Source: Octopus sinensis
Taxonomy: Eukaryota
DNA length: 32,003 bases
Direction of reading: 5' to 3'
NCBI RefSeq assembly: GCF_006345805.1
Contig: NW_021829675.1
Location: 1-32,003 of the forward strand
Shown: positions 2,871 to 32,003 of the stretch, one piece after another
Layout: the number at the start of each line of letters is the position of its first letter
Numbering within the stretch: the first letter of the stretch is position 1
The notes under the pieces: generated by a model
The model's input: only the letters and a program-made list of their open reading frames with translations
The model's database searches: none
What the model was told of the DNA's origin: nothing
Position numbers and translations under genes: made by a program

Positions 2871-3416
2871 ACACACACTCACACACATGTACTACATAAG
2901 TGGGAAGTTCCATCTGTGGGTGTGCTTGTGGAGTTGTTAGCTAACTCCCTCCTACATCGCTTTATCGATTTTGATGAACCTTGTCACGTGAGTAGAACTC
3001 ATGTCTGGAAACGTGATGGCATACTCAGATTGTTGAAAAATCCATAATAGAGCCCTTGGAAGGGATCCTTATATATATTTAATATATTTCATTTTAACAA
3101 TCAAGGAAAATACCCCATTCGCCCAAATTTAAGAGCCAAGGGAAAAAACCCATTAATTTTCCTAAATCATTGGTATAAATCAAATTGAGTATGCTTATTT
3201 CTTAGTATTTGAACTATTAGAGTTATTATCGCAATTCATCCAGTACAACTCTTTAACAAATAAATAGTATTTTCCTAAACAATAGATCCACTTATTTCGG
3301 TTAGTGACATATATATATATATATATATATGTAGGTCCCGGGTTGATTCGGGGTTAACCACAGTAAGTAAGGTACTCAATACATAGCAGAGTAAAATTAA
3401 TTTATTATATAGAAGG

Positions 3417-3467
3417 AGCTTCTACAGGACTAGTACTGTTTCATTCAAGAGAAATCTTCAGGAAGCT
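3417..3467 (-). ncRNA. Type I hammerhead ribozyme, apparently intact
   Basis: Minus strand: agcttc CUGAAGA tttctcttgaat GAAA cag tactagtc ctg UA gaagct. Stem I agcttc/gaagct, full core, weak stem II, stem III acag/ctgt with a palindromic actagt loop, GUA cleavage triplet. Confidence 0.8.
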
Positions 3468-3826
3468 ATTTAACAAGAATTGTATTAGCATTTATACATT
3501 TAGGCAGGTTTAAGGAGTGGTGGTGGGGGACTTTTTTGGGGGTAGGCATAGCGCAAAATACATACTTGGGGGAGTGGTCAAGGAGTCAGTGGAAGTTAGA
3601 TGAAAGAATAGATAAATAAAAAAAAAAAATAAAAAAATAAAATAAAAAAAAAAAAAATAATAAAAAAATAAAAAAATAAAAAAATAAAAAAATAAAAAAA
3701 TATATATAAAAATATATATAAAAAAATATATATAAAAAAAGGGGGGATAGAGTTATAGGTAAATAAGGAGATTCTCACTTATACCTATACACATATGTAT
3801 ACGTATCTACACACACATATATACAC

Positions 3827-3861
<35 letters not shown>

Positions 3862-4297
3862 CACATACACATACACACATATACATACATATCTACATAC
3901 ACACATACATACACCCGCCCACATATACAAATTTATACACATGCACATGCATATACCTGTCTACACATACACACACGTATATATGCATACACTCACTCCC
4001 ATGCATGCACGCATACGCACATGTATATATATACCCACGACCACACATACATATATACACAGAAAAATATATATTCATACGCACATACACTCATGCACAC
4101 ACAACACACCTAGTTCCCTATATACACATATTTACACCTATATATACATACACCCACATACACATATGTACATATATATATATATATATATACATATACA
4201 CGCATACATATATATACATGTGTGCACATACATACATATACACACATACATACACATACACATACACATGTGTACCTATACATACCTACACATACAC

Positions 4298-4342
<45 letters not shown>

Positions 4343-4959
4343 CCAATACAGGCCCATTCCCTAATTTTAATTTTATTATCTTCATTTATTACTTTTGTTA
4401 TCTTGATCGCTAGAGCTAAGGATCCTGGCTATGGCAGCATGTCCATTTTGTGTCTACTAGAAGGCAAGTACTCATTCCCGCACGCACACTCATTAGCACG
4501 TACATTCACCATTCGTAACTCATACACATACACGTACGCACGCGTTATATTCATACATACAAACATCTACATACGTTCACGTATATACACATACGTACTC
4601 GTACCTACAGATTCGTGTCTACACTTTAGGAGGCTAGTCTATACATATGTATAGACTAGCCTCCTAAAGTGTAGACACGAATCTGTAGGTACGAGTACGT
4701 ATGTGTATATACGTGAACGTATGTAGATGTTTGTATGTATGAATATAACGCGTGCGTACGTGTATGTGTATGAGTGTACGAATGGGTGAATGTACGTGCT
4801 AATGAGTGTGCGTGCGGGAATGAGTACTTGCCTTCTAGTAGACAGACAAATGGACATGCTGCCATAGCCAGGATCCTTAGCTCTAGCGATCAAAGATAAC
4901 AAAAGTAATAAATGAAGATAATAAAATTAAAATTAGGGAATGGGCCTGTATTGGATTGT

Positions 4960-5002
<43 letters not shown>

Positions 5003-5436
5003 GTGTATGTGTAGGTATGTATAGGTACACATGTGTATGGTATGTGTATTATGTGTGTGTATATGTATGGTGTGCACACATGTATATATATGTATGCGTG
5101 TATATGTATATATATATATATATATATGTACATATGTGTATGTGGGGTGTATGTATATATAGGTGTAAATATGTGTATATAGGGAACTAGGTGTGTTGTG
5201 TGTGCGATGAGTGTATGTGCGTATGAATATATATTTTCTGTGTATATATGTATGTGTGGTCGTGGGTATATATATACATGTGCGTATGCGTGCATGCATG
5301 GGGAGTGAGTGTATGCATATATACGTGTGTGTATGTGTAGACAGGTATATGCATGTGCATGGTATAAATTTGTATATGTGGGCGGGTGGATTGGTGTGTA
5401 TGTAGATATGTATGTATATGTGTGTATGTGTATGTG

Positions 5437-5471
<35 letters not shown>

Positions 5472-5827
5472 GTGTATATATGTGTGTGTAGATACGTATA
5501 CATATGGTGTAGGTATAAGTGAGAATCTCCTTATTACCTTAAACTCTATCCCCCCTTTTTTTTATATATATTTTTTATATATATATTTTTTATATATTTT
5601 TTTTTTTTTTATTTTTTTATTTTTTTATTTTTATTATTTTTTTATTTTTTATTATTTTTTATTTTTTTTTTTTTATTTATCTATTCTTTCATCTAACTTA
5701 CCACTGACTCCTTGACCACTCCCCCAAGTATGATATTTTGCGCTATGCCTACCCCCAAAAAAGTCCCCCACCACCACTCCTTTAAACCTGCCTAAATGTA
5801 TAAATGCTAATACAATTCTTGTTAAAT

Positions 5828-5877
5828 AGCTTCCTGAAGATTTCTCTTGAATGAAACAGTACTAGTCCTGTAAAGCT
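5828..5877 (+). ncRNA. Mirror copy of the hammerhead in the right palindrome arm
   Basis: Same sequence as 3417-3467 on the + strand, with one G missing in the stem I 3' strand (taaagct). Confidence 0.65.
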
Positions 5878-5920
5878 CCTCTATATAATAAATAAATATA
5901 TATATATTATATATATATAT

Positions 5921-6568
5921 GTAGGTCCCGGGTTGATTCGGGGTTAACCACAGTAAGTAAGGTACTCAATACATAGCAGAGTAAAATTAATTATTATATA
6001 GAAGGAGCTTCTACAGGACTAGTACTGTTTCATTCAAGAGAAAGAATTTCAGGAAGCTATTTAACAAGAATTGTATTAGCATTTATACATTTAGGCAGGT
6101 TTAAAGGAGTGGTGGTGGGGGACTTTTGGGGGTAGGCATAGCGCAAAATATCATACTTGGGGGAGTGGTCAAGGAGTCAGTGGTAAGTTAGATGAAAGAA
6201 TAGATAAATAAAAAAATAAAAAAATAAATAAATAAAAAAATAAAATAAAAAAATAAAAAAATAAAAAATAAAAAAAAATATAAAAAAAATAAATAAAAAA
6301 AAATATATATATAAAAAAAAAATAACAAAATAAAAAAATAAAAAAATAAATAAAATAAAAAAAAAAAATAAAAATAAAAAATAAAAAATAATAAATAAAA
6401 TAAAATAAAAAAAAATATAAAAAAATATAATAAAAAAATAAAAATAAAAAAATATATAAAAAATATATATATATAAAAATATATATATAAAAAAAGGGGG
6501 AATAGAGTTATAGGTAAATAAGGAGATTCTCACTTATACCTATACACATATGTATTACGTATCTACAC

Positions 6569-8475: not shown

Positions 8476-8868
8476 TAGATATATTTCGCAATAGAGCCTA
8501 CATATTTCTGTATAGGCTAGCGTGCGGCCTTCAGTCTATATTATAAGGTAATTAGGTATGAAAAACTGTAATTGTTATTTTCAGCTTTATATAAGATACA
8601 CGCGTTTCTCTAAACCGATTGGGGCTGTTGCACAATCTGCGTAGCAATGCTGCTGCTAATACCAAGGAAGACATCCGATCGTCTCGTGCAAAAATACCAA
8701 TCAGCTGTTGGAAACGAGTCTAAATTATATATATCTTAATAAATATAATTACGTTTTCTACATTTCTTACATAAAAATGTGTTTGCCTGTGTATGTGAGA
8801 GAGAGGATGAGAGAGAGAGAGAGAATATACATATATGCATACAAGTATATATATATCGATATACATGC

Positions 8869-8920
<52 letters not shown>

Positions 8921-9064
8921 ATTTATATACATGTGCATGTGCGTGCAAAAGTTATTATGTTTCGAAAATAAATGCACGATGATCACGTTTGAAACATGCT
9001 GATGGTATATCTGCTGGATCAGGCTAAATGTTTGGGGAAGAAAACAATTCTGAAATATACTCAC

Positions 9065-9169
9065 CGATACCATATCATCATTCCATCCGCCATGTCCTTC
9101 CTGTAACTTTTTAACTTCTTGAATGTCTTCAATTATCTTCACTGTATGACCAACGAGAAATTGATCATC
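9065..9169 (-). CDS. Coding exon 6, first half of MIB repeat 3
   Basis: DDQFLVGHTVKIIEDIQEVKKLQEGHGGWNDDMVS (105 nt), acceptor atgtttcag, donor gtgagt, phase 0-0. Confidence 0.85.
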
Positions 9170-9236
9170 CTGAAACATGGATAAGTAAAAGCAAAACATG
9201 CATATGTATGTGTGTACATATATATATATATATATA

Positions 9237-15105: not shown

Positions 15106-16395
15106 CGAGGGGCGTTCAATAAGTAATGCCCCTGACCCGCTTCCCATAGCAGTAGAGCAACGAAACTTGACCACAGTTATTAGTCTTTTTCTACATAGGA
15201 ACCACCCAGAGTTACGCATTTCTCCCATCGTTTGATGCAGCTCTGGGGACCGTTTTTGTAGAAGAACCCAGCTTGGTCCTCCACCTCAACGTGACTTCAG
15301 AAATCAAGGCTGCATCATCTGGGAAACGCTTTCCTTTCAAAAACAACTTCATGATTGGGAAGAGGTGAAAATCAGAGGGTGCAAGGTCAGGAAAGTAGGG
15401 GGGATGGGGAGGACTTCATAGCCATACGCCTGTGCTTCTGATCTGGCGACAAGCGAGTTGTGGACCGGAGCGTTGTCCTGCAGGAGGAGGATGTCTTTGC
15501 TGATCTTGCCCCGCCTCTTGATTTTGATAACTTCTCTTAATTTCCTCAAAAGTGAAGCATAATAGGCTCCTGCAATTGTGGTACCCTTTGCCAGGAAATC
15601 TGTCATCACTACTCCGTCCTGGTCCCAGAAGACTGTGAGTATGATCTTGCCAGCGGAGTGCTGCACCCTTGCCTTCTTTGGAGGGGGTGAGTCACGGTGC
15701 TTCCACTGCATTGACTGGGCTTTGGTCTCTGGATCATCGTGATGGACCCAGGTTTCATCCTGTGTAATCAGTCTTTTGAGACATTTTGAATCATCTTCTT
15801 GGCACATCTCCAAATTCACCCTCGAGCACTCGACGCGCTCTTGCTTCTGGAAAGGCGTGAGCAGCCTGGGAATCCATCTGGCAGACACCTTTTGCATATG
15901 CAAATGGTCATGAATGATAGTTTCCACAGACCCGGTACTAATCTTGACCTCATGGGCTATTTGGCGAATAATTATGCGTCGATCTTCCAAAATGGCAGCC
16001 TCAACTTGACGGACAGATGCCTCATCAATAGCAGAAGGGGGCGACCAGATCTGGGAGCTGTTTCCACAGAGTTCCGACCATGTTTGAATTCACGATGCCA
16101 GCGTTTTACAAGGTCATATGATGGGCATCATCACCATAAGTTACTTTCATTTCATCAAAAGTCTCCCGTGGTGTGCGTCCTTTCAAATACAAAAACCGGA
16201 TCACTGCTCGACACTCAACAGGCTCCATTTCACACTTGACTCGGTTCAAACACCTGTAAATCAGAAACCACAATTAATTCAGAGATGTAGTTTGCCACTT
16301 ACTCTATAGAGATATAAATGATTGCACATACAAAATTTCAGCTGGATCAAACAACTGCAAGTGGGTCAGAGGCATTACTTATTGAACGTCCCTCA
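15106..16395 (-). mobile_element. Full-length (1290 bp) mariner DNA transposon in intron 2
   Basis: TIRs cgaggggcgttcaataagtaatgcccctgaccc / reverse complement tgagggacgttcaataagtaatgcctctgaccc. TA on both sides (15104-15105, 16396-16397). Confidence 0.95.
15180..16228 (-). pseudogene. Mariner transposase with frameshifts
   Basis: MEPVECRAVIRFLYLKG...WIPRLLT...LITQDETWVHH...LQDNAPVHNS...SDFHLFP...GGSYVEKD*. Continuous translation needs frameshifts near 16120 and 15390-15400, among others. Confidence 0.9.
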
Positions 16396-17399: not shown

Positions 17400-17795
17400 T
17401 GTAGTGGCTGAGTGGTAAGTAGCTTGCTTACCAGCCACATGGTTCCGGGTTCAGTCCCACTGCGTGGCACATTGGGCAGGTGTCTTCTGCTATAGCCTCG
17501 GGCCGACCAAAGCCTTGTGAGTGGATTTGGTAGACGGAAACTGAAAGAAGCCCGTTGTATATATGCATATATATGTATGTGCGTGTATGTTTGTGTGTCT
17601 GTGTTTGTCCCCCTAGCATTGCTTGACAACCGATGCTGGTGTGTTTATGTCCCCGTCACTTAGAAGTTCGGCAAAAGAGACCGATAGAATAAGTACTGGG
17701 CTTACAAAGAATAAGTCCCGGGGTCGATATGCTCGACTAAAGGCGGTGCTCCAGCATGGCCGCAGTAAACTGACTGAAACAAGTAAAAGAGTAAA
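17400..17795 (+). mobile_element. tRNA-derived octopus SINE (bipartite) in intron 1
   Basis: A-box-like tggctgagtgg and B-box-like gggttcagtccc. Near-identical reverse copy at 27020-27431. Confidence 0.85.
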
Positions 17796-19039: not shown

Positions 19040-20390
19040 AAATGTGTGTTATAAACGATATTTTGAGAAATAGTTTTTCGAAAAGAGACTTCGATGGAAA
19101 ATAATTAATTATATTCACGGGACAATTCCAGGTTAATTTGTATGAAAAGAAAAAATGGTTAACTGGGAGTGCTATCCTTATTAAATTATTCTGTTGGCCT
19201 TGTTTACTTTTTTGCTTAGAAAAGAATGTTTAGAATGAAAAAGGATATGATGATTTAAATAATTTACATATGGCTATGTTAAAGCACAAGCGTTCTCAAA
19301 GGCATAAAAATCTTTGATAGATCTTAAAATATTCGAGAATGTTCGCATCGACTTACAATTAAATGCATGTAAAAATCAAAGCATACAACATCATAATGAG
19401 AAAGTCAGACGAAACAGATCCATTCTGCAACGATTGATCGATGTTGTTATTTTTTTAGGTTTCCAGGAATTATCGATTTGGGGTCATGTTGAATCTGAAG
19501 GTTCTAATAATAGTGGAAATTATAAAGAACTCGTATATGTAATCATTAAATATGACAAAAAATGGAAAGTCATCTAGATACAGCTTCTATCTTCACTGGT
19601 CTGTCGAACAGAATTCAAAATGACTTGATCGATGCAATTCATAAAGTTATGTTGAATAAGATGGAAAAGGAAATTGAGCAAGCTAAGTTTGCTTCTATTT
19701 TTGTTGATGAGACATCTGTTGCCTCAGCATATTCACAACTGTCAACAGTTTTACGTTATGTTACAGAAGACTGTGTGGCGAAAGAACGATTTATCGGTTT
19801 TAGTGATGTTAGTGCAGATCGATCTGCAAATGCTTTATCTGAACATGTTTTTACATGCATTGAATTGTGGAAATGTGAAAACAAATTGATTGCACAAACC
19901 TATTAACGGTGTCACTACAATGGCAGGACAATTTAATGGGTTACAGGCAAAAGTAAGGAAGAAATATGAATGTGCGATCTTTATTCATTGTTGTGCCCAT
20001 ATTCTAAATTTAGTTCTTTCACAATCATGCTCTGCTATGAAAGAATGCAAGATATTTTTTTGTACAATAAACGGACTGAGTACATTTTTTACGAAATCAC
20101 CGAAAAGGGCTAATGCATTAGATAACATTGTTAAAAAAAATATTTCCGTCTTATTTAACATCCTCCAGAGTAAAAGTCATGTCATAGTGCATTGAAAAGA
20201 GCAAATAGATAAAACTAGAACTGTACTCGTAAACAAACTTGATAATCGGAATTCAGAGATCCAAGAATTGAGCCCCATCGACATTATAAAATACTTTATA
20301 ACAAAATTATCAGTACAATAGTTGACCAAATAAAAGCACGATATTCATCTTTAGAAGAGTTTAAATTCGTGGAACTTTCGAACATATGGG
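19040..20390 (+). pseudogene. hAT transposase fragments
   Basis: LFCWPCLLF; ILQRLIDVVIFLGFQEL..WGHVES; SNRIQNDLI; FASIFVDETS..SQLSTVLRYV; ERFIGF; IFIHCCAHILNLVL. Multiple stops and frameshifts; C-terminal dimerisation region not seen. Confidence 0.85.
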
Positions 20391-21302: not shown

Positions 21303-21600
21303 CCTGTTAGGTGGCCAGTCCAGCGTAACGTGACTTCATCAACGTTTGACCAATCGTTTCGTTAGGTGGCTTAGTCAAGCAGAACGGGACGTCATCAATA
21401 TTCTGACCAATCCCGACCTATAGCTGTATTAGATCTGCCCCTTGTCTGTACCCTGTTAGGTGACTAGTCAAGCAGAACGGGACGTCATCAATATTCTGAC
21501 CAATCCCGGCCTATAGCTGTATTAGATCTGCCCCTTGTCTGTTTCCTGTCCAATCTAGCAGAACTAGACGTCATCAACGTGTTGACCAATCCGAATCGGG
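21303..21600 (+). repeat. Tandem repeats in the PLE 3' UTR (two 94-bp copies plus two partial ones)
   Basis: gttaggtg.ctagtcaagcagaacgggacgtcatcaatattctgaccaatccc at 21361 and 21455; related partial units at ~21303 and ~21550. Confidence 0.85.
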
Positions 21601-21809: not shown

Positions 21810-23950
21810 TAAATTTGTCTAAATTTTTTGATGAAATACTGTTCTTTATTTTGGCGTTGTGTGAAGGTTGCGTTGTTACTGAATTTATAAAGCGGGGGTA
21901 GTTGTAAATTTCGGATTTACATTTCCAGCACATCTATCTATGTGTCCGCTGACCGGTATTTTCCGGTATTCAGGGTTTCTAAATTTGTGATTTATGCACC
22001 GCCATCCTGTTACGTAAGCTATTTTTGTATGGCCTATATACTGCCTATTGCAGCCTGCGCATGTTATGACGTAAATTAAGTTTTCTGATGCGCAGGTGAA
22101 GTTTGCTCTAATGGTGAACTGGTGGCCTTGTTCTAGTATAAATTCTGAACCTTCTATCAAGATGACACAGATTCCGCAGTTGGGCCTTCCACATTTTCTA
22201 ACTGCTGGTTTGTGGTTGTGTGTGAGTGAGTGCAGTTTAGCTTGGGTTAAAATCCTTTTCAGGGATTTTGGTTGCCGTTTACTTTTGATGATGGTTGTGT
22301 TTCGAGGATCCGGTTCATCTTGGGTTTCCCTTTAGTAGGGCTGTGCTTTGTAGTATGGTGCTGAAGGCTCATTGTTGAGTGGTGTGTGTGTAGAGATGTA
22401 GGGAAGGGTTTTTATTGTTCTTTCTTTTTTGGTTTTGTTTGTCTCAGGTCTTCTACACTTAATTTGAGTGCCCTTTGGATTGCACTGTCTATTAGGGGCT
22501 GTGGATAGTTTCTATTTGTGAGTGTGGTTCTAAGTTCCTGGAGACGTGTGTGTCGGGTGTTGTGTCTGATATTATGGTGCAGATCCTTCTAGCTAAACAA
22601 AAAGGGACATTTATTCTTGTGTTGTCGGGTGACATGAATCAAAGGGTAGGTATTGTTTGTGGAGTCTGTCGGTTTATAGTAGATAGCTGTCTCTATTTTG
22701 TTGCGGCGTTTTCTTAATGAGGATGTCTAAAATGGTAATTCTTCTTCGTTATGATCCATCGTGAATTGTATATTATCATTTATTCCATTTAATAGATAAA
22801 TTCCTCAAGTTTCTCTATACTTTTGTCCCAGATGATGAAACAGTCATCGAGGTAACTTTCCAGTTGTTCTGGATATAGGTGGAGAAGGTGTTTCCAAATT
22901 TCTCGAGTGTTATCCGGGGTAGAGTATTTTCTCGAGGTATCCCATCACTAGGTTGGCAAAGATGGTGCAGTACGCGTGCCCATCGCTGTTCCCGATCTTT
23001 GTCTGTAGAAATTATTGTCAAAAATAAAGTAATTGTTTTCTAGAATAAATCTAAGTCCTTCTATTATAAGGTCTTTGTTTATGCGAGTTGGGAGTTCAAA
23101 GGGGTAGTTATTCAGCCAGAAGGTGATCGCTTCTATTCCTAGATTGTGAGGGATGTTAGAATAAAGATTAACTACGTCGAATGATACTAGAAGGGTTTTC
23201 TCATGGACTGTTTTAGGGAGGTGGTTGTGAGCATATCTATCGTCTCTTACGTAGTTTTGATGTGTTTTAGGAAAGGTTTAAGAAGTGTGTCTAAGAAATT
23301 GCTGAGGCGGTGAGTCTCACATGCTGGCCCTGCTATAATCGGTCTAAGTTTAAGATCGTTTGGTGAAGGGATTTTGATGAGTATATCGGTAGATGTTTTG
23401 CATGTTTCTCTAAATTTGGCTTTTGTGTACTTTAGGGATACCATAGAACAAACTCGATTTGCATTGAAGTTAGTGATGTTATGCATTATTTTTTGCTGAT
23501 TATACTGTTGGGCCCTTTCATAATACGTTTCATCTCTAATAGGGATAGCACTAAATTTTATAATCGTTGGTTCATTACTACTATCGCGTTGCCCTTATCT
23601 GCCTCCTTAATTGTTATTGCTTTGTCTTCTCTTAGTTTGATGAGGTCGTTCCAGTCTCTTTTGTTAAAGTTAGGGCTGTGTTTTTGTTTCTTGATGAATT
23701 GAAACGGGAAATTAGTTATGTAGTTACAATAGCGGTCTAAGGCTTTATTCTTTCCCTTGGTGGGGGTTGTAATTGCTCTTGTTTCTAGCTATTGAAATCC
23801 TCATCTATTTGTTTGCCTTGAAATTCCTCGGTGAGTCTTAGTTTCCTGCAAAATTCGAAATATCATCTTTCATTTCATAGTAATTAGAACGTTGTGGGGT
23901 TGGTGTAAATTTAAGTCTTTTGGAGAGTATGCTTATTTCGTTAGGTGTAA
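21810..23950 (-). pseudogene. PLE reverse transcriptase plus GIY-YIG endonuclease, frameshifted
   Basis: KLRPIIAGPAC; LLVSFDVVNLYSNIPH; YRQRSGTAMG; YLDD at 22843-22854; IQFTMD...ELP; YYKPTDS; FTCASENLIYVITCAGCNRQYIGHT. Confidence 0.9.
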
Positions 23951-24329
23951 GTTCTTTGTTTGAGAGATTGATTATCTTAATTACCTGAGGTTTCTTTTGT
24001 TTGTCCTTTGCCATCGTGTGTCCCTGTTCCTGTGTGTAAGGTCTAAAAAATGGTGGTGTGTTGTGTTATGTTCAAAACTACTATTTATCTGTCTCATGTT
24101 GTTATAATTGTCAGAGTGAGTTGTGGTGCTCTGTTCTGAAGTGTGTTGTTGTACCTAGTGTTCCGTCTTAGCTCATCAGATATATTGTGTTGGTAGTCGT
24201 TTCCTCCGTAGTGCATGTGTGTTTGTATGGTTGGTTCCTGGGTGGATGTTTGGTAGTAAGTAGAGTTTTAGTTGGTTATGTGGATTGTATTTCATAGTAT
24301 TGTATGTTGTAGCCCTTAGGTTCGTGAAA

Positions 24330-24590
24330 GGTGTGGTGGGCCCCTGTAAGTGTTTTGGGGTTGGTGTAGGTAGTGTGGGGTGCGTTTTAAATGTATTTTT
24401 CTGGTGTAGAGTGTGTTTGGATTTCTTGGTGGTTGTTCTGTTCTGTTGGTATATCTATTTTCGAACTGGTATGGTGGGCCTCTGTAAGTGTTTGGGGGTT
24501 GTGTAGGAGGTGGTGTGGGTGTGTTTTAAGTGTATTTTTCTGGTGTAGAGTGTGTTAGGATTTCTTGGTGGTTGTTCCGTTCTGTTGGTA
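24330..24590. repeat. ~138-bp tandem duplication inside the PLE N-terminal region
   Basis: ggt.tggtgggcc.ctgtaagtgttt.gggg...tgtatttttctggtgtagagtgtgtt.ggatttcttggtggttgttc.gttctgttggta occurs twice. Confidence 0.85.
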
Positions 24591-25374
24591 ATGGTTTTGA
24601 TTTACTTAATTTTACGAAGGGGTTGTTGGATATGTGTTCATTTTTGAAGTTGGTTTCATAATCCAAGAACCAGATGGCGCTCTTTTCCCATCGTTGGAGG
24701 GACTTAAGTTCCTCTTTTTCACATTCTTCATTCCATAGTGCTGGTAATGTTTCAGTATTGATGTCGTCTATTAGTATGATGACTTCTTCGTTGATTTCCT
24801 CATCTATGGGTTTTACTTTTTCTTCATTCGTCTTAGCTCTCAGCTTAAGTAGTTCTATTTCCATCTTCATTTTTTCTAATGACATTTTTTCTCTAAGTCT
24901 TCTTTGTTCTTCTGGTTCTTCCGAGATGGGCTTGATTTGTAATTTGCAGGGTATGACTAGGGGTGTTGAGTCTAGCCACTTTTGGTAAATCTCTGCTTTA
25001 TTCTGATTTTGTATCATTTTCCAAACGGCGAATTTTCTGTTTCGCTGTAGTGTTCTCCATTGGGGGAGGGCTTGGTTCTTTATTTGTAATGTTGAAGTTG
25101 TTCGGTTCTTCTCATGTGGTCCTTCTTTTTGTTGCTCTTGTTTCGTAAAGTTTGTGAAGAATGTCGTTATTGTATCGCATAGATTTTCAACGTTCTCGTA
25201 TATTTCAGAGGGTGTTTTATTCGATTCGGTTTCCTCGTTAGTTTGTGTAGAAGGTCGAGATGTTGAGTTGAGTTTGATTAACACTGCTGTTAGATTTGAA
25301 TTTATGCTTTTCAATTCTTTCAGTATCTCTTCATTTATTGAGGAGATGTCGTTGGTGTCTTTTTTAGTAGGCAT
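24526..25374 (-). CDS. PLE N-terminal region ORF (282 aa, K/E/Q-rich, coiled-coil-like); probably the 5' part of the element's single long ORF
   Basis: Starts 30 nt after the 5' pLTR; open for 282 codons; no catalytic motif recognised. Confidence 0.65.
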   Translation of the reverse strand: MPTKKDTNDISSINEEILKELKSINSNLTAVLIKLNSTSRPSTQTNEETESNKTPSEIYENVENLCDTITTFFTNFTKQEQQKEGPHEKNRTTSTLQIKNQALPQWRTLQRNRKFAVWKMIQNQNKAEIYQKWLDSTPLVIPCKLQIKPISEEPEEQRRLREKMSLEKMKMEIELLKLRAKTNEEKVKPIDEEINEEVIILIDDINTETLPALWNEECEKEELKSLQRWEKSAIWFLDYETNFKNEHISNNPFVKLSKSKPLPTERNNHQEILTHSTPEKYT

Positions 25375-26299: not shown

Positions 26300-27019
26300 A
26301 GCACAGCCGATGAAGGCTGGAAGTAAATGAGCCGAACCGTTGTGGTAAAAAACGAACAAGATGAGGACACATATCCGTCCAATGTAACTAATATAAGTAG
26401 CGTACAGAATTATTCATCTCTTCATAGAAAATTTTAAATGAAAAAATAATATTTTTCCATAATCTTAATCTCGTTATTCTTCACATAGATTGACAAAAAT
26501 AATCGAAAAAATAGTAAAAAACTAAAAATTTAGGGTGACGGAGGGAATGAAAAATTTTGAAAACATGGCATTTTGCATATTCGGAATGTACGTCATCGAA
26601 AACATATGAATCCACTGAAAAAAAAACTCAGAATGATCATATAGGAGAAGCTGCAGCCCCCAGTATGAGTACAGGCCATAATTTGTGTAAAAGTGAAACA
26701 ATAATGTATCGCTGAAAAAACCCGGAAGTCAAAAGTGAAAGAATAAAAGTGAAACAATATTGTTATCAATAGTGAAAGAATAATACCGCTGAAAAAAATT
26801 CACAAGTTTCATATAGGAAGGAGAGTGTGCAACCCTCTGTATTGGCAAGAGCCAAAATTTCATTCCCCGAGAATCTTCCCCGAGTAATGAAATACTTTCG
26901 TACACACTAATCCAGCGATTTCACTGTGCATAAAGAAAGCACGCACGCACCCACCCACAGAGAATTTTTATTGATATAGATATATACACGTATATATATA
27001 TATATATATACGTATACTC

Positions 27020-27431
27020 TTTTACTCTTTACTCTTTTAATTGTTTCAGTAACTTGACTGCGGCCATACTGGAGCACCGCCTTTAGTCGTGCAAATCGAC
27101 CCCGGGACTTATTCTTTGTAAGCCCAGTACTTATTCTATCGGTCTCTTTCGCCGAACCGCTAAGTGACGGGGACGTAAACACACCAGCATCGGTTGTCAA
27201 GCAATGCTAGAGGGACAAACACAGACACACAAACACATATACACACATATATGTATATACATATATGCGACGGGCTTCTTTCAGTTTCCATCTAGCAAAT
27301 CCACTCACAAGGCATTGGTCGGCCCGGGGCTATAGCAGAAGACACTTGCCCAAGATGCCACGCAGTGAGACTGAACCCGGAACCATGTGGTTGGATAGCA
27401 AGCTACTTACCACACAGCCACTCCTGCGCCT
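27020..27431 (-). mobile_element. tRNA-derived octopus SINE, inverted relative to 17400-17795
   Basis: Reverse complement matches 17400-17795 over both unique parts. Confidence 0.85.
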
Positions 27432-27451
27432 ATATATGTACATTCATATAT

Positions 27452-27917: not shown

Positions 27918-28211
27918 ATATATATATATATTATATATATATAATATATAGGGAGAATTCACAAAATAAAACAAAAGATAAAGACAGGTGCTGTAGATAA
28001 CAAACAGATGTATTACTTTAACGCTCGGGAACTGAAAAAGTGTTTAACCTTTCGAGCCTACGCTCTACCACGGAAAGAAACAAGGAGAGAAAATAAAAAC
28101 TATTTCGTGGCTAGCAATCTACACACACATATAGGTATATATATGTGTGCGAGTGTGTATGTGTATGTATACATAAATATATATATATGTGCATATCAAT
28201 ATATATGTGCG

Positions 28212-28243
<32 letters not shown>

Positions 28244-28252
28244 ATATTATAT

Positions 28253-31085
28253 AATAATAGTTATCGCCATACTAATATGGCATTCTTATAAAAATAAGAA
28301 AAAAGCCGTCCGCTTATTAGCTCCATGAGGCCATCGCCTTAAGTTAGCTATTTGATACACAAACTGTATCCATATAACCTTCGAACAAGGGAGGTTAGTC
28401 GCTCCACACTACTTGACCGGCAGCTACAGACGCGTTTCGGAGTATTGCCCCTTTTCAATGCAGCGTAGCCAGCCATTAGGTGTCGCTTCCGACAATCTCT
28501 GTTCGATGGTTTTATTTACCTAGTTTCGGTGGAATACATCCACTTGTTTTCAATAATAGAAATATTAAAATAACTAAGTCTCTCTAAAAGAGAACAGCGG
28601 CAGCGTTCCCGGAAAATAATAGTTATCGCCATACTAATATGGCATTCTTATAAAAATAAGAAAAAAGCTGTCCGCTTATTAGCTCCATGAGGCCATCGCC
28701 TTAAGTTAGCTATTTGATACACAAACTGTATCCATATAACCTTCGAACAAGGGAGGTCAGTCGCTCCACACTACTTGACCGGCAGCTACAGACGCGTTTC
28801 GGAGTATTGCCCCTTTTCAATGCAGCGTAGCCAGCCAGTAGGTGTCGCTTCCGACAATCTCTGTTCGATGGTTTTATTTACCTAGTTTCGGTGAATACAT
28901 CCACTTGTTTTCAATAATAGAAATATTAAAATAACTAAGTCTCTCTAAAAGAGAACAGCGGCAGCGTTCCCGGAAAATAATAGTTATCGCCATACTAATA
29001 TGGCATTTTATAAAAATAAGAAAAAAGCTGTCCGCTTATTAGCTCCATGAGGCCATCGCCTTAGGTTAGCTATTTGATACACAAACTGTATCCATATAAC
29101 CTTCGAACAAGGGAGGTCAGTCGCTCCACACTACTTGACCGGCAGCTACAGACGCGTTTCGGAGTATTGCCCCTTTTCAATGCAGCGTAGCCATATTAGT
29201 ATGGCGATAACTATTATTTTCCGGGAACGCTGCCGCTGTTCTCTTTTAGAGAGACTTAGTTATTTTAATATTTCTATTATTGAAAACAAGTGGATGTATT
29301 CCACCGAAACTAGGTAAATAAAACCATCGAACAGAGATTGTCGGAAGCGACACCTACTGGCTGGCTACGCTGCATTGAAAAGGGGCAATACTCCGAAACG
29401 CGTCTGTAGCTGCCGGTCAAGTAGTGTGGAGCGACTGACCTCCCTTGTTCGAAGGTTATATGGATACAGTTTGTGTATCAAATAGCTAACTTAAGGCGAT
29501 GGCCTCATGGAGCTAATAAGCGGACAGCTTTTTTCTTATTTTTATCAGAATGCTATATTAGTATGGCGATAACTATTATTTTCCGGGAACGCTGCCGCTG
29601 TTCTCTTTTAGAGAGACTTAGTTATTTTAATATTTCTATTATTGAAAACAAGTGGATGTATTCCACCGAAACTAGGTAAATAAAACATCGACCAGAGATT
29701 GTCGGAAGCGACACCTACTGGCTGGCTACGCTGCATTGAAAAGGGGCAATACTCCAAACGCGTCTGTAGCTGCCGGTCAAGTAGTGTGGAGCGACTGACC
29801 TCCCTTGTTCGAAGGTTATATGGATACAGTTTGTGTATCAAATAGCTAACTTAAGGCGATGGCCTCATGGAGCTAATAAGCGGACAGCTTTTTTCTTATT
29901 TTTATAAGAGTGCTATATTAGTATGGCGATAACTAATATTTTCCGGGAACGCTGCCGCTGTTCTCTTTTAGAGAGACTTAGTTATTTTAATATATTCTAT
30001 TATTGAAAACAAGTGGATGTATTCCACCGAAACTAGGTAAATAAAACCATCGAACAGAGATTGTCGGAAGCGACACCTACTGGCTGGCTACGCTGCATTG
30101 AAAAGGGGCAATACTCCGAAACGCGTCTGTAGCTGCCGGTCAAGTAGTGTGGAGCGACTGACCTCCCTTGTTCGAAGGTTATATGGATACAGTTTGTGTA
30201 TCAAATAGCTAACTAAGGCGATGGCCTCATGGAGCTAATAAGCGGACAGCTTTTTTCTTATTTTTATAAGAATGCCATATTAGTATGGCGATAACTATTA
30301 TTTTCCGGAACGCTGCCGCTGTTCTCTTTTAGAGAGACTTAGTTATTTTAATATTACTATTATTGAAAACAAGTGGATGTATTCCACCGAACTAGGTAAA
30401 TAAAACCATCGAACAGAGATTGTCGGAAGCGACACCTACTGGCTGGCTACGCTGCATTGAAAAGGGGCAATACTCCGAAACGCGTCTGTAGCTGCCGGTC
30501 AAGTAGTGTGGAGCGACTGACCTCCCTTGTTCGAAGGTTATATGGATACAGTTTGTGTATCAAATAGCTAACTTAAGGCGATGGCCTCATGGAGCTAATA
30601 AGCGGACAGCTTTTTTCTTATTTTTATAAGAATGCCATATTAGTATGGCGATAACTATTATTTTCCGGGAACGCTGCCGCTGTTCTCTTTTAGAGAGACT
30701 TGTTATTTTTAATATTACTATTATTGAAAACAAGTGGATGTATTCCACCGAAACTAGGTAAATAAAACCATCGAACAGAGATTGTCGGAAGCGACACCTA
30801 CTGGCTGGCTACGCTGCATTGAAAAGGGGCAATACTCCGAAACGCGTCTGTAGCTGCGGTCAAGTAGTGTGGAGCGACTGACCTCCCTTGTTCGAAGGTT
30901 ATATGGATACAGTTGTGTGTATCAAATAGCTAACTTAAGGCGATGGCCTCATGGAGCTAATAAGCGGACAGCTTTTTTCTATTTTTATAAGAATGCCATA
31001 TTAGTATGGCGATAACTATTATTTTCCGGGAACGCTGTCGCTGTTCTCTTTTAGAGAGACTTAGTTATTTTAATATTTCTATTAT
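28253..31085. repeat. ~360-bp-unit tandem array in two opposed arms (about 2.6 units, then about 5.25 inverted units); hammerhead-bearing, retrozyme-like
   Basis: Unit starts aataatagttatcgccatac at ~28253, ~28615 and ~28976. Orientation flips at 29190-29193. Near-identical units; (TA)n at both ends. Confidence 0.95.
29369..29410 (+). ncRNA. Minimal type I hammerhead ribozyme (U3-A8 variant); representative of 8 copies
   Basis: gctgca UUGAAAA gggg caata ctcc GAAA cgcg UC tgtagc: stem I with one G-U pair, stem II with one G-U pair, palindromic ACGCGU stem III, GUC triplet. + copies at 29369, 29730 (G12 missing), 30092, 30451, 30813; minus copies at 28423-28464, 28785-28826, 29145-29186. Confidence 0.82.
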
Positions 31086-31122
<37 letters not shown>

Positions 31123-32003
31123 GCAAATGTATATTTATATATATATTATATAATATAATATAATATATATATTATATATATATATATATATATAAATGTA
31201 TGTATGTAGGCATGCATATATATATATTTATACATATTCAGGAGGGCCTAAAAGTCACTGAGGAATTGCAATTTTTTAGAATTCTTTCGTTTTTAAAAAC
31301 TTTTTCTGATCTTTTTAGGGATTCCTTGGACTACGTTCTGAAAATACGTTATTGAAATGTGTGTGTGTGTGTTGTGTGTGTGTGTGTGTGTATAGGCACA
31401 TATTAAAATGATCTCAAAAATTATAAAAGCTATTATGATGCTATTATAGGAAATTACCTTAATTGTAGATATAGAGACGTGTTGTGTTGCCTGGAAAGTT
31501 TGGTTCTCGTCAAGACAGAGCTTTAAATCAGTTACAGAAATGAATGCGTCTCAAATTTGCTTCAGAATATATAGCTCTCTCTTTGCATGCCAACTTACCT
31601 GTGTTTCTACGAATGAGGATGCGATATAACAGAAGGAGAAAGTGAAAGAGGCGGAGTTTGAAAGTTTGTTGTTTGTTTCTTACTGTTTTCTTCTTCATGC
31701 ATTGATTTTGCTTTTAACTAATAGTGGTCGTTTAGTTATCGTGGGCGTGTCACTACTATGGCAACACGTATGATATAATTTGATATAGAAGTAGAGTTTT
31801 TGCGCAGTATATTTCTATATTCTGTCGACCATATATATACATACATATATATATATATATATGTGTGTGTGTATGTGTGTGTGTGTGTGCGTGTGTGTCT
31901 GTGTGTGTGTATACTTTTTACGCATTCGCACATATATGCACATATATATATACATACATACAAGCATAATTAGAGACGTAAATATCCATACATGCATACA
32001 TAG

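What the first reader, a model, noticed from the sequence alone, without database searches (positions are those of the whole stretch)
28253..31085. Retrozyme-like array: eight minimal hammerheads in ~360-nt non-coding repeats
Sequence: every unit carries a 42-nt type I hammerhead with the compensated U3-A8 core and a 6-nt palindrome in place of stem III; 7 of 8 look intact; no recognisable protein-coding content. Established: minimal PLE-associated hammerheads with palindromic stem III cleave as dimers, and non-LTR retrozymes of metazoans are 170-400-nt tandem repeats processed into circular RNAs. Inference: transcription would release ~360-nt monomers that circularise, and the array is an integrated multimeric (rolling-circle) cDNA. 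I do not know of a description of this family in cephalopods, but I cannot search. The opposed arms mean one transcript would also form long dsRNA, and both strands carry ribozymes.
Basis: partly seen in the sequence, partly recalled or inferred. Interest (0 to 1): 0.92.

Follow-up and report, generated by a model that had tools for sequence, protein, structure and literature searches.

The report
Octopus hammerhead-ribozyme retrozyme repeat array
This is a tandem array of a 362-base non-coding repeat in an octopus genome, each copy carrying a small self-cutting RNA motif; it is a new cephalopod member of an already described class of mobile elements (animal "retrozymes"), not a new kind of system.

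Summary
Window 28253-31085 has 2.6 units (sense on the minus strand) joined head-to-head to 5.2 units (sense on the plus strand) of a 362-nt repeat, 98-99% identical. There are eight hammerhead motifs: seven identical and one lacking G12.

Rfam finds no hammerhead. However, a covariance model I built only from four experimentally validated retrozyme hammerheads (coral, mussel, two axolotl) hits all seven intact motifs full-length at 30 bits (E about 1e-6).

Diverged relatives exist in Octopus bimaculoides and O. vulgaris. Across three copies, helix I and the core 3-8 pair stay 100% paired, with both-sided changes at 5 of 7 pairs. The U3-A8 core is therefore a compensated switch from C3-G8 within one family.

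The unit is non-coding (longest open frame 55 codons), 41% GC, and folds far better than shuffles (z = -6.5).

The motif is not a Penelope-type minimal hammerhead. It has the canonical animal type I layout, closest to the axolotl dimer-acting type.

The locus anatomy resembles Penelope-like-element integration: inverted plus tandem arms, 3' ends outward in a (TA)n microsatellite, both ending at the unit's only two CTATTAT heptamers.

Cleavage, circles and mobility are untested. Verdict: new member of a known kind, moderate interest.

The parts
28164..28252 (.). Left flank: TA-rich microsatellite abutting the array
   Evidence: TRF row 28164-28253 period 2; sequence; TA-microsatellite-like DNA covers only 4.8% of the window
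28253..29193 (-). Left arm: 2.6 units, sense on the minus strand. It consists of a 43-nt 5' piece (hammerhead only), two full monomers of 360 and 362 nt, and a 176-nt 3' piece
28253..28260 (-). 3' end of the left arm: octamer CTATTATT (unit positions 169-176) merging into (TA)n
   Evidence: predicted unpaired
28423..28464 (-). Hammerhead, intact; C17 at 28429
   Evidence: model R1 30.0 bits, full length
28785..28826 (-). Hammerhead, intact; C17 at 28791
29145..29186 (-). Hammerhead, intact; C17 at 29151. Only 3 bp of its helix I extension remain because the inversion junction follows
29190..29193 (.). Head-to-head (5'-to-5') inversion junction with 4-nt overlap GCCA. The arms meet out of phase (unit position 321 versus 148), so the nearest complementary arms are 168 nt apart
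   Evidence: the repeat finder I10
29190..31085 (+). Right arm: 5.2 units, sense on the plus strand. It consists of a 215-nt 5'-truncated piece, four monomers of 360, 363, 359 and 362 nt, and a 237-nt 3' piece
29369..29410 (+). Hammerhead, intact; C17 at 29404
29730..29770 (+). Hammerhead, defective: G12 deleted (GAAA reads AAA); C17 equivalent at 29764
   Evidence: R1 19.5 bits against 30.0 for the others
30092..30133 (+). Hammerhead, intact; C17 at 30127
30451..30492 (+). Hammerhead, intact; C17 at 30486
30813..30854 (+). Hammerhead, 42-nt core intact; C17 at 30848. A 1-nt deletion lies just 3' of it, in the helix I extension
31079..31085 (+). 3' end of the right arm: heptamer CTATTAT (unit positions 232-238) merging into (TA)n
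31086..31237 (.). Right flank: TA-rich microsatellite
   Evidence: TRF rows 31083-31237

Best explanation
The locus is an integrated multimer of a non-autonomous, non-coding retroelement of the animal 'non-LTR retrozyme' class, in an Octopus genome.

Proposed mechanism, with each step marked shown or inferred:
1. (Inferred) Each arm is transcribed as a multimer.
2. (Shown in silico only; cleavage inferred) Each unit carries one type I hammerhead whose helix III is only A15.1-U16.1 plus the palindrome CGCG. Two neighbouring hammerheads therefore pair through ACGCGU/ACGCGU into a double hammerhead and cut after C17. This would release 359-363-nt monomers with 5'-OH and 2',3'-cyclic phosphate ends. 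The G12-less copy would give a 723-nt dimer.
3. (Inferred from coral, mussel and axolotl) A host tRNA ligase of the RtcB type circularises the compact, highly paired monomer.
4. (Inferred; the locus anatomy fits) A Penelope-like element's RT/GIY-YIG enzyme copies the circular or multimeric RNA for more than one unit length into nicked AT-rich DNA. It primes on both target strands. That would give two arms with 3' ends outward in a (TA)n microsatellite and 5' ends joined head-to-head by microhomology.
For: Ribozyme identity:
- Core, three helices and cut site can be read directly.
- Model R1 was built only from the coral Amil224, mussel Mg353 and axolotl Ax353/Ax330 retrozyme hammerheads (sequences from the supplement of PMC7229834; alignment A1). 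It hits all 7 intact motifs full-length at 30.0 bits, E about 1e-6 over the whole window with filters off, and the G12-less copy at 19.5 bits.
- Column-by-column it matches the validated motifs: 6-bp helix I ending C-G, A-U; G10.1-C11.1; 4-bp helix II; 5-nt loop 2; palindromic helix III; C17.

Family and covariation:
- nhmmer finds diverged relatives in O. bimaculoides (L101:19882-20320 and L103:14150-14436) and a fragment in O. vulgaris (L104:11504-11693), with E from 1e-7 to 1e-19.
- Across the array, L101 and L103 copies, 21 of 21 cells of helix I plus the 3-8 pair are paired, against 22-58% when partners are slid.
- 5 of 7 pairs change on both sides, including U3-A8 versus C3-G8. No shuffle out of 500 reaches the observed pairing (table).

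Retrozyme traits:
- 362-nt tandem unit, 41% GC, and no ORF over 55 codons.
- Minimum free energy -123.8 kcal/mol against -87.5 +/- 5.6 for shuffles, z = -6.5. The hammerhead's helices I and II are retained in that fold.
- The double-hammerhead dimer is the cofold minimum: -38.1 against 2 x -16.0 kcal/mol.

PLE link:
- A degenerate RT + CxxC + GIY-YIG element lies at about 21.9-25.4 kb.
- PLE insertions are described as partial tandems with an inverted 5'-truncated copy and a (TA)n bias (PMC8557442).
- A purified PLE protein nicks and extends both strands in AT-rich DNA and starts reverse transcription at internal sites (PMC11167929).
- Both arms end at the unit's only two CTATTAT heptamers. 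By my estimate this is about 0.006 under random ends.
- No variant separates the two arms.
Against: - Rfam's hammerhead models give no hit even at E <= 10 on a 71-nt piece. They also miss a second, fully canonical-core hammerhead in this window, so this negative is weak.
- There are no expression, cleavage or circle data.
- Weak-helix-III hammerheads cleave poorly as monomers (6% in 1 h for the axolotl Rtz_331).
- PLE minimal hammerheads have low activity in vitro.
- Only 1 of 9 Xenopus retrozyme dimers cleaved.
- The effect of U3-A8 on rate in this context is unknown.
- The unit has no detectable similarity to the PLE remnant in the window, so the trans-mobilising partner is not identified.
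- Two variants are shared by adjacent units, which suggests some DNA-level duplication or conversion.
- Only one array was seen. The relatives found elsewhere are solitary, old copies.
Confidence: 0.7

Rival explanations
1. It is an ordinary minisatellite. An old, dispersed hammerhead-bearing repeat was amplified locally at the DNA level by unequal crossing-over or slippage and then partly inverted. The ribozyme motif is inherited baggage, and no RNA circle or fresh reverse transcription was involved in making the array.
For: - Two variants are shared by neighbouring units only.
- The Li/Pollet preprint explicitly proposes local amplification by unequal crossover for retrozyme minisatellites.
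- The relatives found elsewhere are solitary and diverged.
- The window contains many other tandem and inverted repeats.
Against: - Both arm ends fall on the same heptamer in a (TA)n tract, with 3' ends outward. This is what target-primed reverse transcription on two strands predicts, and is not expected from crossover.
- 7 of 8 ribozymes are identical and intact.
- Family covariation shows the ribozyme was under selection during the family's history.
Confidence: 0.18
2. The unit is simply the pseudo-LTR of an autonomous Penelope-like element, here present as terminal repeats without the coding body.
For: - Hammerheads sit in PLE pLTRs.
- Xenopus retrozymes are sister to pLTRs.
- A PLE remnant lies 3-6 kb away.
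- In O. vulgaris L104 a family fragment lies about 270 nt from PLE ORF pieces.
Against: - There is no similarity between the unit and the PLE remnant or anything else in the window (blastn and nhmmer).
- No hammerhead was found in that PLE's flanks.
- The motif lacks the PLE minimal-hammerhead traits: a 7-8-bp helix II, a bulged nucleotide after A9, and no helix III nucleotides.
- In L101 the family copy is 9 kb from the PLE ORF.
Confidence: 0.07
3. The inverted arrangement, or the copy number, is an assembly artefact such as a fold-back chimera or a mis-joined repeat.
For: - Many unit differences are 1-nt indels typical of long-read error.
- The same window holds a zero-spacer perfect palindrome at 4646/4647 that looks suspicious.
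Against: - The junction is out of phase (unit position 321 joined to 148). The nearest complementary arms are 168 nt apart, so this is not a symmetric fold-back.
- The arms carry different private variants.
- This rival concerns only the architecture, not the ribozyme-bearing repeat itself.
Confidence: 0.1
4. It is an integrated cDNA of an exogenous viroid-like or delta-like circular RNA replicon rather than a genomic retroelement.
For: Small size, compact fold and a hammerhead.
Against: - The ribozyme is present in one polarity only.
- There is no ORF.
- Diverged copies sit at other chromosomal sites in two more Octopus species, so this is an old resident genomic family.
- There are no relatives in the viral or metagenome collections.
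Confidence: 0.02

Closest known systems
Axolotl/newt non-LTR retrozymes (HHR_Amex1 in Rtz_331; satellite 2 type), Cervera & de la Pena 2020, PMC7229834
   Same: - Tandem, non-coding unit of about 330-360 nt.
- Type I hammerhead with a 6-bp helix I, a 3x1 internal loop 1 (U-N-C opposite U), and a 4-bp helix II with a CAA-rich loop.
- Helix III is one base pair capped by a palindromic tetraloop (CAUG there, CGCG here), so dimeric action is expected.
   Different: - The core pair is U3-A8 instead of C3-G8.
- There is no sequence similarity outside the ribozyme.
- The host is a cephalopod.
- Activity and circular RNA are shown for axolotl and not tested here.
Mussel (Mytilus galloprovincialis) retrozyme Mg353, PMC7229834
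   Same: - The host is also a mollusc.
- 353-nt tandem unit.
- The hammerhead ends in GAAACGCGCGUC^UG (here GAAACGCGUC^UG), with a 6-bp helix I and a 4-bp helix II.
   Different: - The rest of the unit is unrelated: alignment z is about 1.4 local and -1.5 global against shuffles.
- The mussel core is canonical.
- Mussel circular RNAs are shown experimentally.
Minimal hammerheads of Penelope-like elements (Cervera & de la Pena 2014, PMC4209133)
   Same: - Type I topology, palindromic 15.2-16.2, dimer logic, and G10.1-C11.1.
- The U3-A8 covariation was first reported there (about 1,300 hits in Schistosoma).
- Pairs of motifs on opposite strands were noted there.
   Different: - Those motifs have no helix III nucleotides, a 7-8-bp helix II, a 4-5-bp helix I and an extra nucleotide after A9.
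- They sit in the pLTRs of coding elements.
- None of this applies here.
Penelope-like element insertion architecture (Craig et al. 2021, PMC8557442; Frangieh et al. 2024, PMC11167929)
   Same: Partial tandem plus an inverted 5'-truncated copy joined at the 5' ends. Also shared: insertion in a (TA)n or AT-rich target, alternative internal reverse-transcription start sites that leave a 'tail', and extension on both target strands.
   Different: - Here the inserted sequence is a 362-nt non-coding unit, not a 3-4-kb coding element.
- The offset between the two ends is 63 nt, against the 30-40-bp PLE tail.
- Both ends share a heptamer. For the anole PLE the start site was not homologous to the target.

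Membership tests
Hammerhead ribozyme, type I | Conserved core C3 U4 G5 A6 N7 G8 A9 ... G12 A13 A14 A15.1 ... U16.1 H17 | tested here: met
   All positions are present in 7 copies, except that C3-G8 is replaced by the isosteric U3-A8. This covariation is documented in natural PLE hammerheads. A sister copy in O. bimaculoides has C3-G8.
Hammerhead ribozyme, type I | Three helices around the core with helix I open; G10.1-C11.1 | tested here: met
   Helix I is 6 bp plus a 3x1 loop plus 8 bp. Helix II is 4 bp starting G-C. Helix III is A-U plus palindromic CGCG.
Hammerhead ribozyme, type I | Reaches the Rfam Hammerhead_1 (or any Rfam hammerhead) threshold | tested here: not met
   No hit at gathering score, nor at E <= 10 on 2.9 kb or on 71 nt. 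Control: Rfam also misses the canonical-core hammerhead at 3417-3467, so the test lacks sensitivity here.
Hammerhead ribozyme, type I | Matches a covariance model of experimentally validated animal retrozyme hammerheads | tested here: met
   R1 (4 sequences, none from octopus) gives 30.0 bits, model positions 1-44 of 44, E about 1e-6, for all 7 intact copies.
Hammerhead ribozyme, type I | Helices supported by compensatory change among relatives | tested here: met
   Across 3 family members, helix I plus the 3-8 pair are 100% paired and 5 of 7 pairs change on both sides. Slid controls give 22-58% paired. Helix II position 10.1-11.1 reads G-C, U-A and A-U. Only three sequences were available.
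Hammerhead ribozyme, type I | Site-specific self-cleavage | not testable with these tools
   Needs in vitro transcription of a dimer or longer.
Metazoan non-LTR retrozyme | Short tandem repeats (about 150-450 bp), every unit with a type I hammerhead | tested here: met
   Period 362; 8 units or part-units, each with the motif. Under the strict 'active' definition of the 2026 preprint (hammerhead in all repeats) one unit fails.
Metazoan non-LTR retrozyme | Non-coding, GC below 50%, no LTRs | tested here: met
   Longest frame 55 codons; no credible Pfam match; GC 41%; no terminal repeats other than the units themselves. PBS and PPT motifs were not searched for specifically.
Metazoan non-LTR retrozyme | RNA predicted to be compact and highly self-paired | tested here: met
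   z = -6.5 against dinucleotide shuffles; 62% of bases paired in the minimum-energy fold.
Metazoan non-LTR retrozyme | Co-occurrence with Penelope-like elements in the genome | tested here: met
   RT and GIY-YIG remnants lie in the window. The closest protein is from O. bimaculoides (81% identity). Full-length relatives carry RVT_1 plus a C-terminal GIY-YIG domain.
Metazoan non-LTR retrozyme | Expressed as linear and circular RNA of unit length | not testable with these tools
   No transcriptome could be searched by nucleotide. ORF-based look-ups found nothing.
PLE minimal hammerhead / pLTR | No helix III nucleotides, long helix II, a bulge after A9, and location in the terminal repeat of a coding PLE | tested here: not met
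   definitions.
Viroid-like or delta-like circular RNA replicon | Ribozymes in both polarities and/or an ORF; no fixed chromosomal copies | tested here: not met
   Ribozyme in one polarity only, no ORF, and old chromosomal relatives in three Octopus species.

The most novel reading that the evidence does not exclude
The locus is a preserved footprint of how animal retrozymes integrate. On this reading a PLE-type enzyme primed reverse transcription on both nicked strands of a (TA)n target. Each time it started at one of the two exposed CUAUUAU loops of a circular (or multimeric) retrozyme RNA. It ran round the template 2.6 and 5.2 times, and the two cDNAs were joined 5'-to-5' by 4-nt microhomology.

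Together with the within-family C3-G8 to U3-A8 switch, this would be direct structural evidence linking non-LTR retrozymes to PLE machinery in an invertebrate. It would also be an example of a catalytic-core pair evolving by compensation.
Probability: 0.3. Interest if true: 0.6.

Novelty: new member of a known kind. Interest (0 to 1): 0.42.

Why it matters
- It extends hammerhead retrozymes to cephalopods, with a family that Rfam-based annotation does not see. The giant squid genome paper counted only Rfam Hammerhead_1 hits.
- It gives a natural, within-family example of the C3-G8 to U3-A8 core swap in a canonical (not minimal) type I hammerhead. That swap can be tested with simple single and double revertants.
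- One locus shows tandem and inverted arms, outward 3' ends in a TA microsatellite, and shared end heptamers. This makes the proposed PLE-dependent, more-than-unit-length reverse transcription of retrozymes concretely testable.
- None of this changes the known picture of what retrozymes are.

Tried and rejected
- Rfam cmscan at gathering score and at E <= 10, on the whole window, on 2.9 kb and on 71 nt, found no hammerhead. A control on a second hammerhead was also negative, so the negative was set aside.
- An exact 39-mer and a degenerate core pattern in metagenome contigs gave 0 and 73 hits. None of the 73 had both helices, so they are chance matches. The same degenerate pattern in viral contigs gave 26 single hits, which were not examined further.
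- Ten array ORFs and ten other window ORFs were looked up by exact sequence in the protein collection. None was present.
- A homology search with the longest array frame found no candidate. Transcript or other-genome copies therefore could not be reached that way.
- The unit was compared with the rest of the window by blastn (word size 7) and nhmmer. Only AT-rich noise came back.
- A search for a hammerhead in the flanks of the window's PLE remnant found none. There is only a repeated ATTGGTCA...TTGATGACGTC motif.
- The body of the octopus unit was compared with the mussel Mg353 retrozyme. It is not similar.
- Pfam on the PLE ORF pieces gave nothing. Identity was instead established by a HMMER search of the RT piece and the domain content of the hits.
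- ARAGORN found no tRNA-like part.
- MAFFT misaligned the hammerheads in A3 and partly in A5. Helix II was therefore tabulated by hand.
- My first fold script timed out in a home-made shuffle. The strand folding was used instead.
Full report
**What is there**

Tandem Repeats Finder gives two abutting arrays of period 362: 28253-29193 (2.6 copies) and 29190-31085 (5.3 copies). They are reverse complements of each other, with arms 98-100% complementary.

Cutting the sequence at every ACGCGTC and aligning the pieces gives six full monomers of 359-363 nt and four partial ones, 98-99% identical to a 362-nt consensus. In the sense orientation:
- The left arm reads on the minus strand. It holds a 43-nt 5' piece, two monomers and a 176-nt 3' piece.
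- The right arm reads on the plus strand. It holds a 215-nt 5' piece, four monomers and a 237-nt 3' piece.

The arms therefore meet 5'-to-5' at 29190-29193, sharing GCCA, and their 3' ends point outward. They meet out of phase (unit position 321 against 148), so the nearest complementary stretches are 168 nt apart (I10). This is not a symmetric fold-back.

**The ribozyme motif**

Every unit contains GCUGCA-UUGAAAA-GGGG CAAUA CUCC-GAA-A CGCG U-C^UGUAGC.
- Seven copies are identical.
- The copy with C17 at 29764 has lost G12.
- On the plus strand C17 lies at 29404, 29764, 30127, 30486 and 30848. On the minus strand it lies at 29151, 28791 and 28429.
- The motif occurs in one polarity of the unit only.

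Chance is not a credible source:
- The relaxed descriptor gives 0.02-0.04 hits per random 32 kb. The strict version gave none in about 38 Mb.
- None of the 73 chance matches to the core string in a metagenome collection had both helices.

**Rfam negative, and an independent test**

Rfam finds no hammerhead at its thresholds, or even at E <= 10 on a 71-nt piece. I therefore built a separate test.

The supplement of Cervera & de la Pena 2020 prints four constructs whose hammerheads were shown to cleave: coral Amil224, mussel Mg353, and axolotl Ax353 and Ax330. A covariance model built from those four motifs alone (A1, R1) was run over the whole window with filters off:
- All seven intact copies score 30.0 bits, full length, E about 1e-6.
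- The G12-less copy scores 19.5 bits.

Laid side by side, the octopus motif has the same layout as the validated ones:
- a 6-bp helix I closing with C-G and A-U;
- a 4-bp helix II starting G10.1-C11.1;
- a 5-nt loop 2;
- a palindrome between A15.1 and U16.1;
- C17.

Its helix I continues through a 3x1 internal loop (UAC opposite U) into an 8-bp stem. The two axolotl motifs have the same geometry, UUC/U and UGC/U.

By the published definitions this is the canonical animal type I hammerhead with a weak, palindromic helix III. It is closest to the axolotl HHR_Amex1 type, which cleaves poorly alone and well as a dimer. It is not the PLE 'minimal' hammerhead, which has no helix III nucleotides, a 7-8-bp helix II and a bulge after A9.

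The same model uncovered a second, canonical-core hammerhead at 3417-3467 that Rfam also misses. The Rfam negative therefore carries little weight.

**Relatives and covariation**

The nucleotide collections held nothing related. ORF-based look-ups also failed.

The RT piece of a degenerate Penelope-like element in the window (22951-23277, minus strand) led to Octopus proteins. Through them I fetched ten chromosomal loci, 259 kb in all, from O. bimaculoides, O. sinensis and O. vulgaris. nhmmer finds diverged copies of the 362-nt family in three of them:
- L101:19882-20320, about 1.2 units, about 77% identity in aligned columns;
- L103:14150-14436;
- a fragment at L104:11504-11693.

The L101 copy has an intact hammerhead with a canonical core: CUCAUA-CUGAGGA-UGGG UAACCA CCCA-GAAA-CCUAUG-UC^UGUGAG (R1 23.9 bits). 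The L103 copy keeps all helices and a palindromic UCCGGA, but has U4 changed to C.

Across the three copies:
- Helix I and the 3-8 pair are paired in 21 of 21 cells, against 22-58% with slid partners.
- Five of the seven pairs change on both sides.
- No shuffle out of 500 reaches the observed value.
- Position 10.1-11.1 of helix II reads G-C, U-A and A-U.

The U3-A8 of the array is thus a compensated replacement of C3-G8 within one family. That is good evidence the fold was under selection. The U3-A8 covariation itself is already known from Schistosoma PLE hammerheads.

**Retrozyme traits**

- The unit is 41% GC.
- It has no frame longer than 55 codons and no credible Pfam match.
- It has no tRNA-like part.
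- It folds to -123.8 kcal/mol against -87.5 +/- 5.6 for shuffles, z = -6.5. Helices I and II of the hammerhead are kept in that fold.
- Two hammerheads cofold into the double-hammerhead form through a 6-bp ACGCGU duplex (-38.1 against 2 x -16.0 kcal/mol).

These are the features listed for animal non-LTR retrozymes: 170-400-nt tandem units, GC below 50%, non-coding, and highly self-paired RNA. Outside the ribozyme the unit is unrelated to the mussel retrozyme.

**How it probably got there**

The array sits inside a TA microsatellite. Such sequence covers 4.8% of the window.

The left arm ends at unit position 175 and the right arm at 238. These are the unit's only two CTATTAT(T) sites. The CUA(U) at the start of each site is predicted to be unpaired. 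With random end points, I estimate the chance of the second end matching the first in this way at about 0.006.

The literature describes matching behaviour for Penelope-like elements:
- Their insertions are partial tandems, often with an inverted 5'-truncated copy at the 5' end, and they prefer (TA)n (PMC8557442).
- A purified anole PLE protein nicks and extends both strands of AT-rich DNA and starts reverse transcription at two internal sites. This explains the optional 'tail' of PLE copies (PMC11167929).

The locus fits that pattern. [quoted passage not shown]

This step is inference:
- The unit shows no similarity to that remnant.
- Two variants shared by neighbouring units leave room for DNA-level amplification, which a 2026 preprint favours for retrozyme minisatellites.

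**Limits**

Nothing here shows cleavage, circles or transcription. Predicted retrozyme hammerheads often fail in vitro: only 1 of 9 in Xenopus cleaved, and PLE minimal motifs have low activity. Covariation rests on three sequences. The inversion cannot be checked without reads.

The host is an Octopus. Repeat identities are highest to O. sinensis loci, at about 92%, but the species is not established.

**Known or new**

Retrozymes with type I hammerheads are described in cnidarians, a mussel, amphibians and other animals. Rfam hammerhead hits have been counted in the giant squid genome. I found no paper describing a cephalopod retrozyme.

This is a new member of a known kind, with two features worth a short follow-up: the compensated core pair within a family, and an integration footprint that matches PLE biochemistry.

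Noticed in passing
window 3417-3467 (-), 5829-5880 (+), 6006-6058 (-); elements about 3300-3600, 5700-5907, 5890-6190: A second, unrelated hammerhead family: AGCUUC-CUGAAGA-UUUC UCUU GAAU-GAAA-CAG UACUAGUC CUG-UA^GAAGCU.
- It has a canonical core, a 6-bp helix I, a stable 4-bp helix III and a U.U at the base of helix II.
- There are three copies of an element of about 280 nt. One is intact, one has a damaged helix I and one has a damaged core.
- Each copy is preceded by T-rich low-complexity sequence and ends in (TA)n.
- R1 scores the intact copy 18.1 bits; Rfam does not see it.
- An inverted pair of the same family is in O. sinensis at L108:419-516 (21.2 and 16.9 bits).
   Followed up: partly
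window about 3300-5990, centre 4646/4647: A large palindrome. The arms 4518-4646 and 4647-4775 are 100% complementary with no spacer, and the outer parts are 89-93% complementary. It carries two of the family-2 hammerhead copies in opposite orientation. It is either a real inverted duplication or a fold-back assembly artefact.
   Followed up: no
window about 21885-25374 (-): A degenerate Penelope-like element.
[quoted passage not shown]
- The RT piece is 81% identical to O. bimaculoides XP_014779461.1.
- At the DNA level it is 92% identical to an O. sinensis copy (L102).
- No hammerhead was found in its flanks.
   Followed up: partly
window 21350-21600 (-): Downstream of the PLE ORF lies a 93-bp tandem repeat that carries repeated ATTGGTCA...TTGATGACGTC motifs, resembling CCAAT-box and CRE sites. 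Its function is unknown.
   Followed up: no
window 17403-17795 (+) and 27015-27436 (-): Two inverted copies of a repeat of about 400 bp that is very abundant in Octopus. There are several copies in most of the ten fetched loci, at 81-93% identity. It is probably a SINE-like element.
   Followed up: no
window 15349-15990 (-); 19562-20195 (+): A mariner-type transposase fragment (Pfam Transposase_1, E = 1e-22), and a DUF4371 (hAT/ZMYM-like) fragment.
   Followed up: no
window 8720-9199 (-): An ORF with a Mind-bomb SH3 repeat match (PF18346, E = 1.4e-8). It may be an exon of a MIB-like gene, in which case the window would be largely intronic.
   Followed up: no
L101:19882-20320; L103:14150-14436: The O. 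bimaculoides relative in L101 lies within the annotated range of a Snf7-domain gene, probably in an intron. The L103 relative abuts an assembly gap (a run of N) exactly at the 5' edge of its hammerhead.
   Followed up: no
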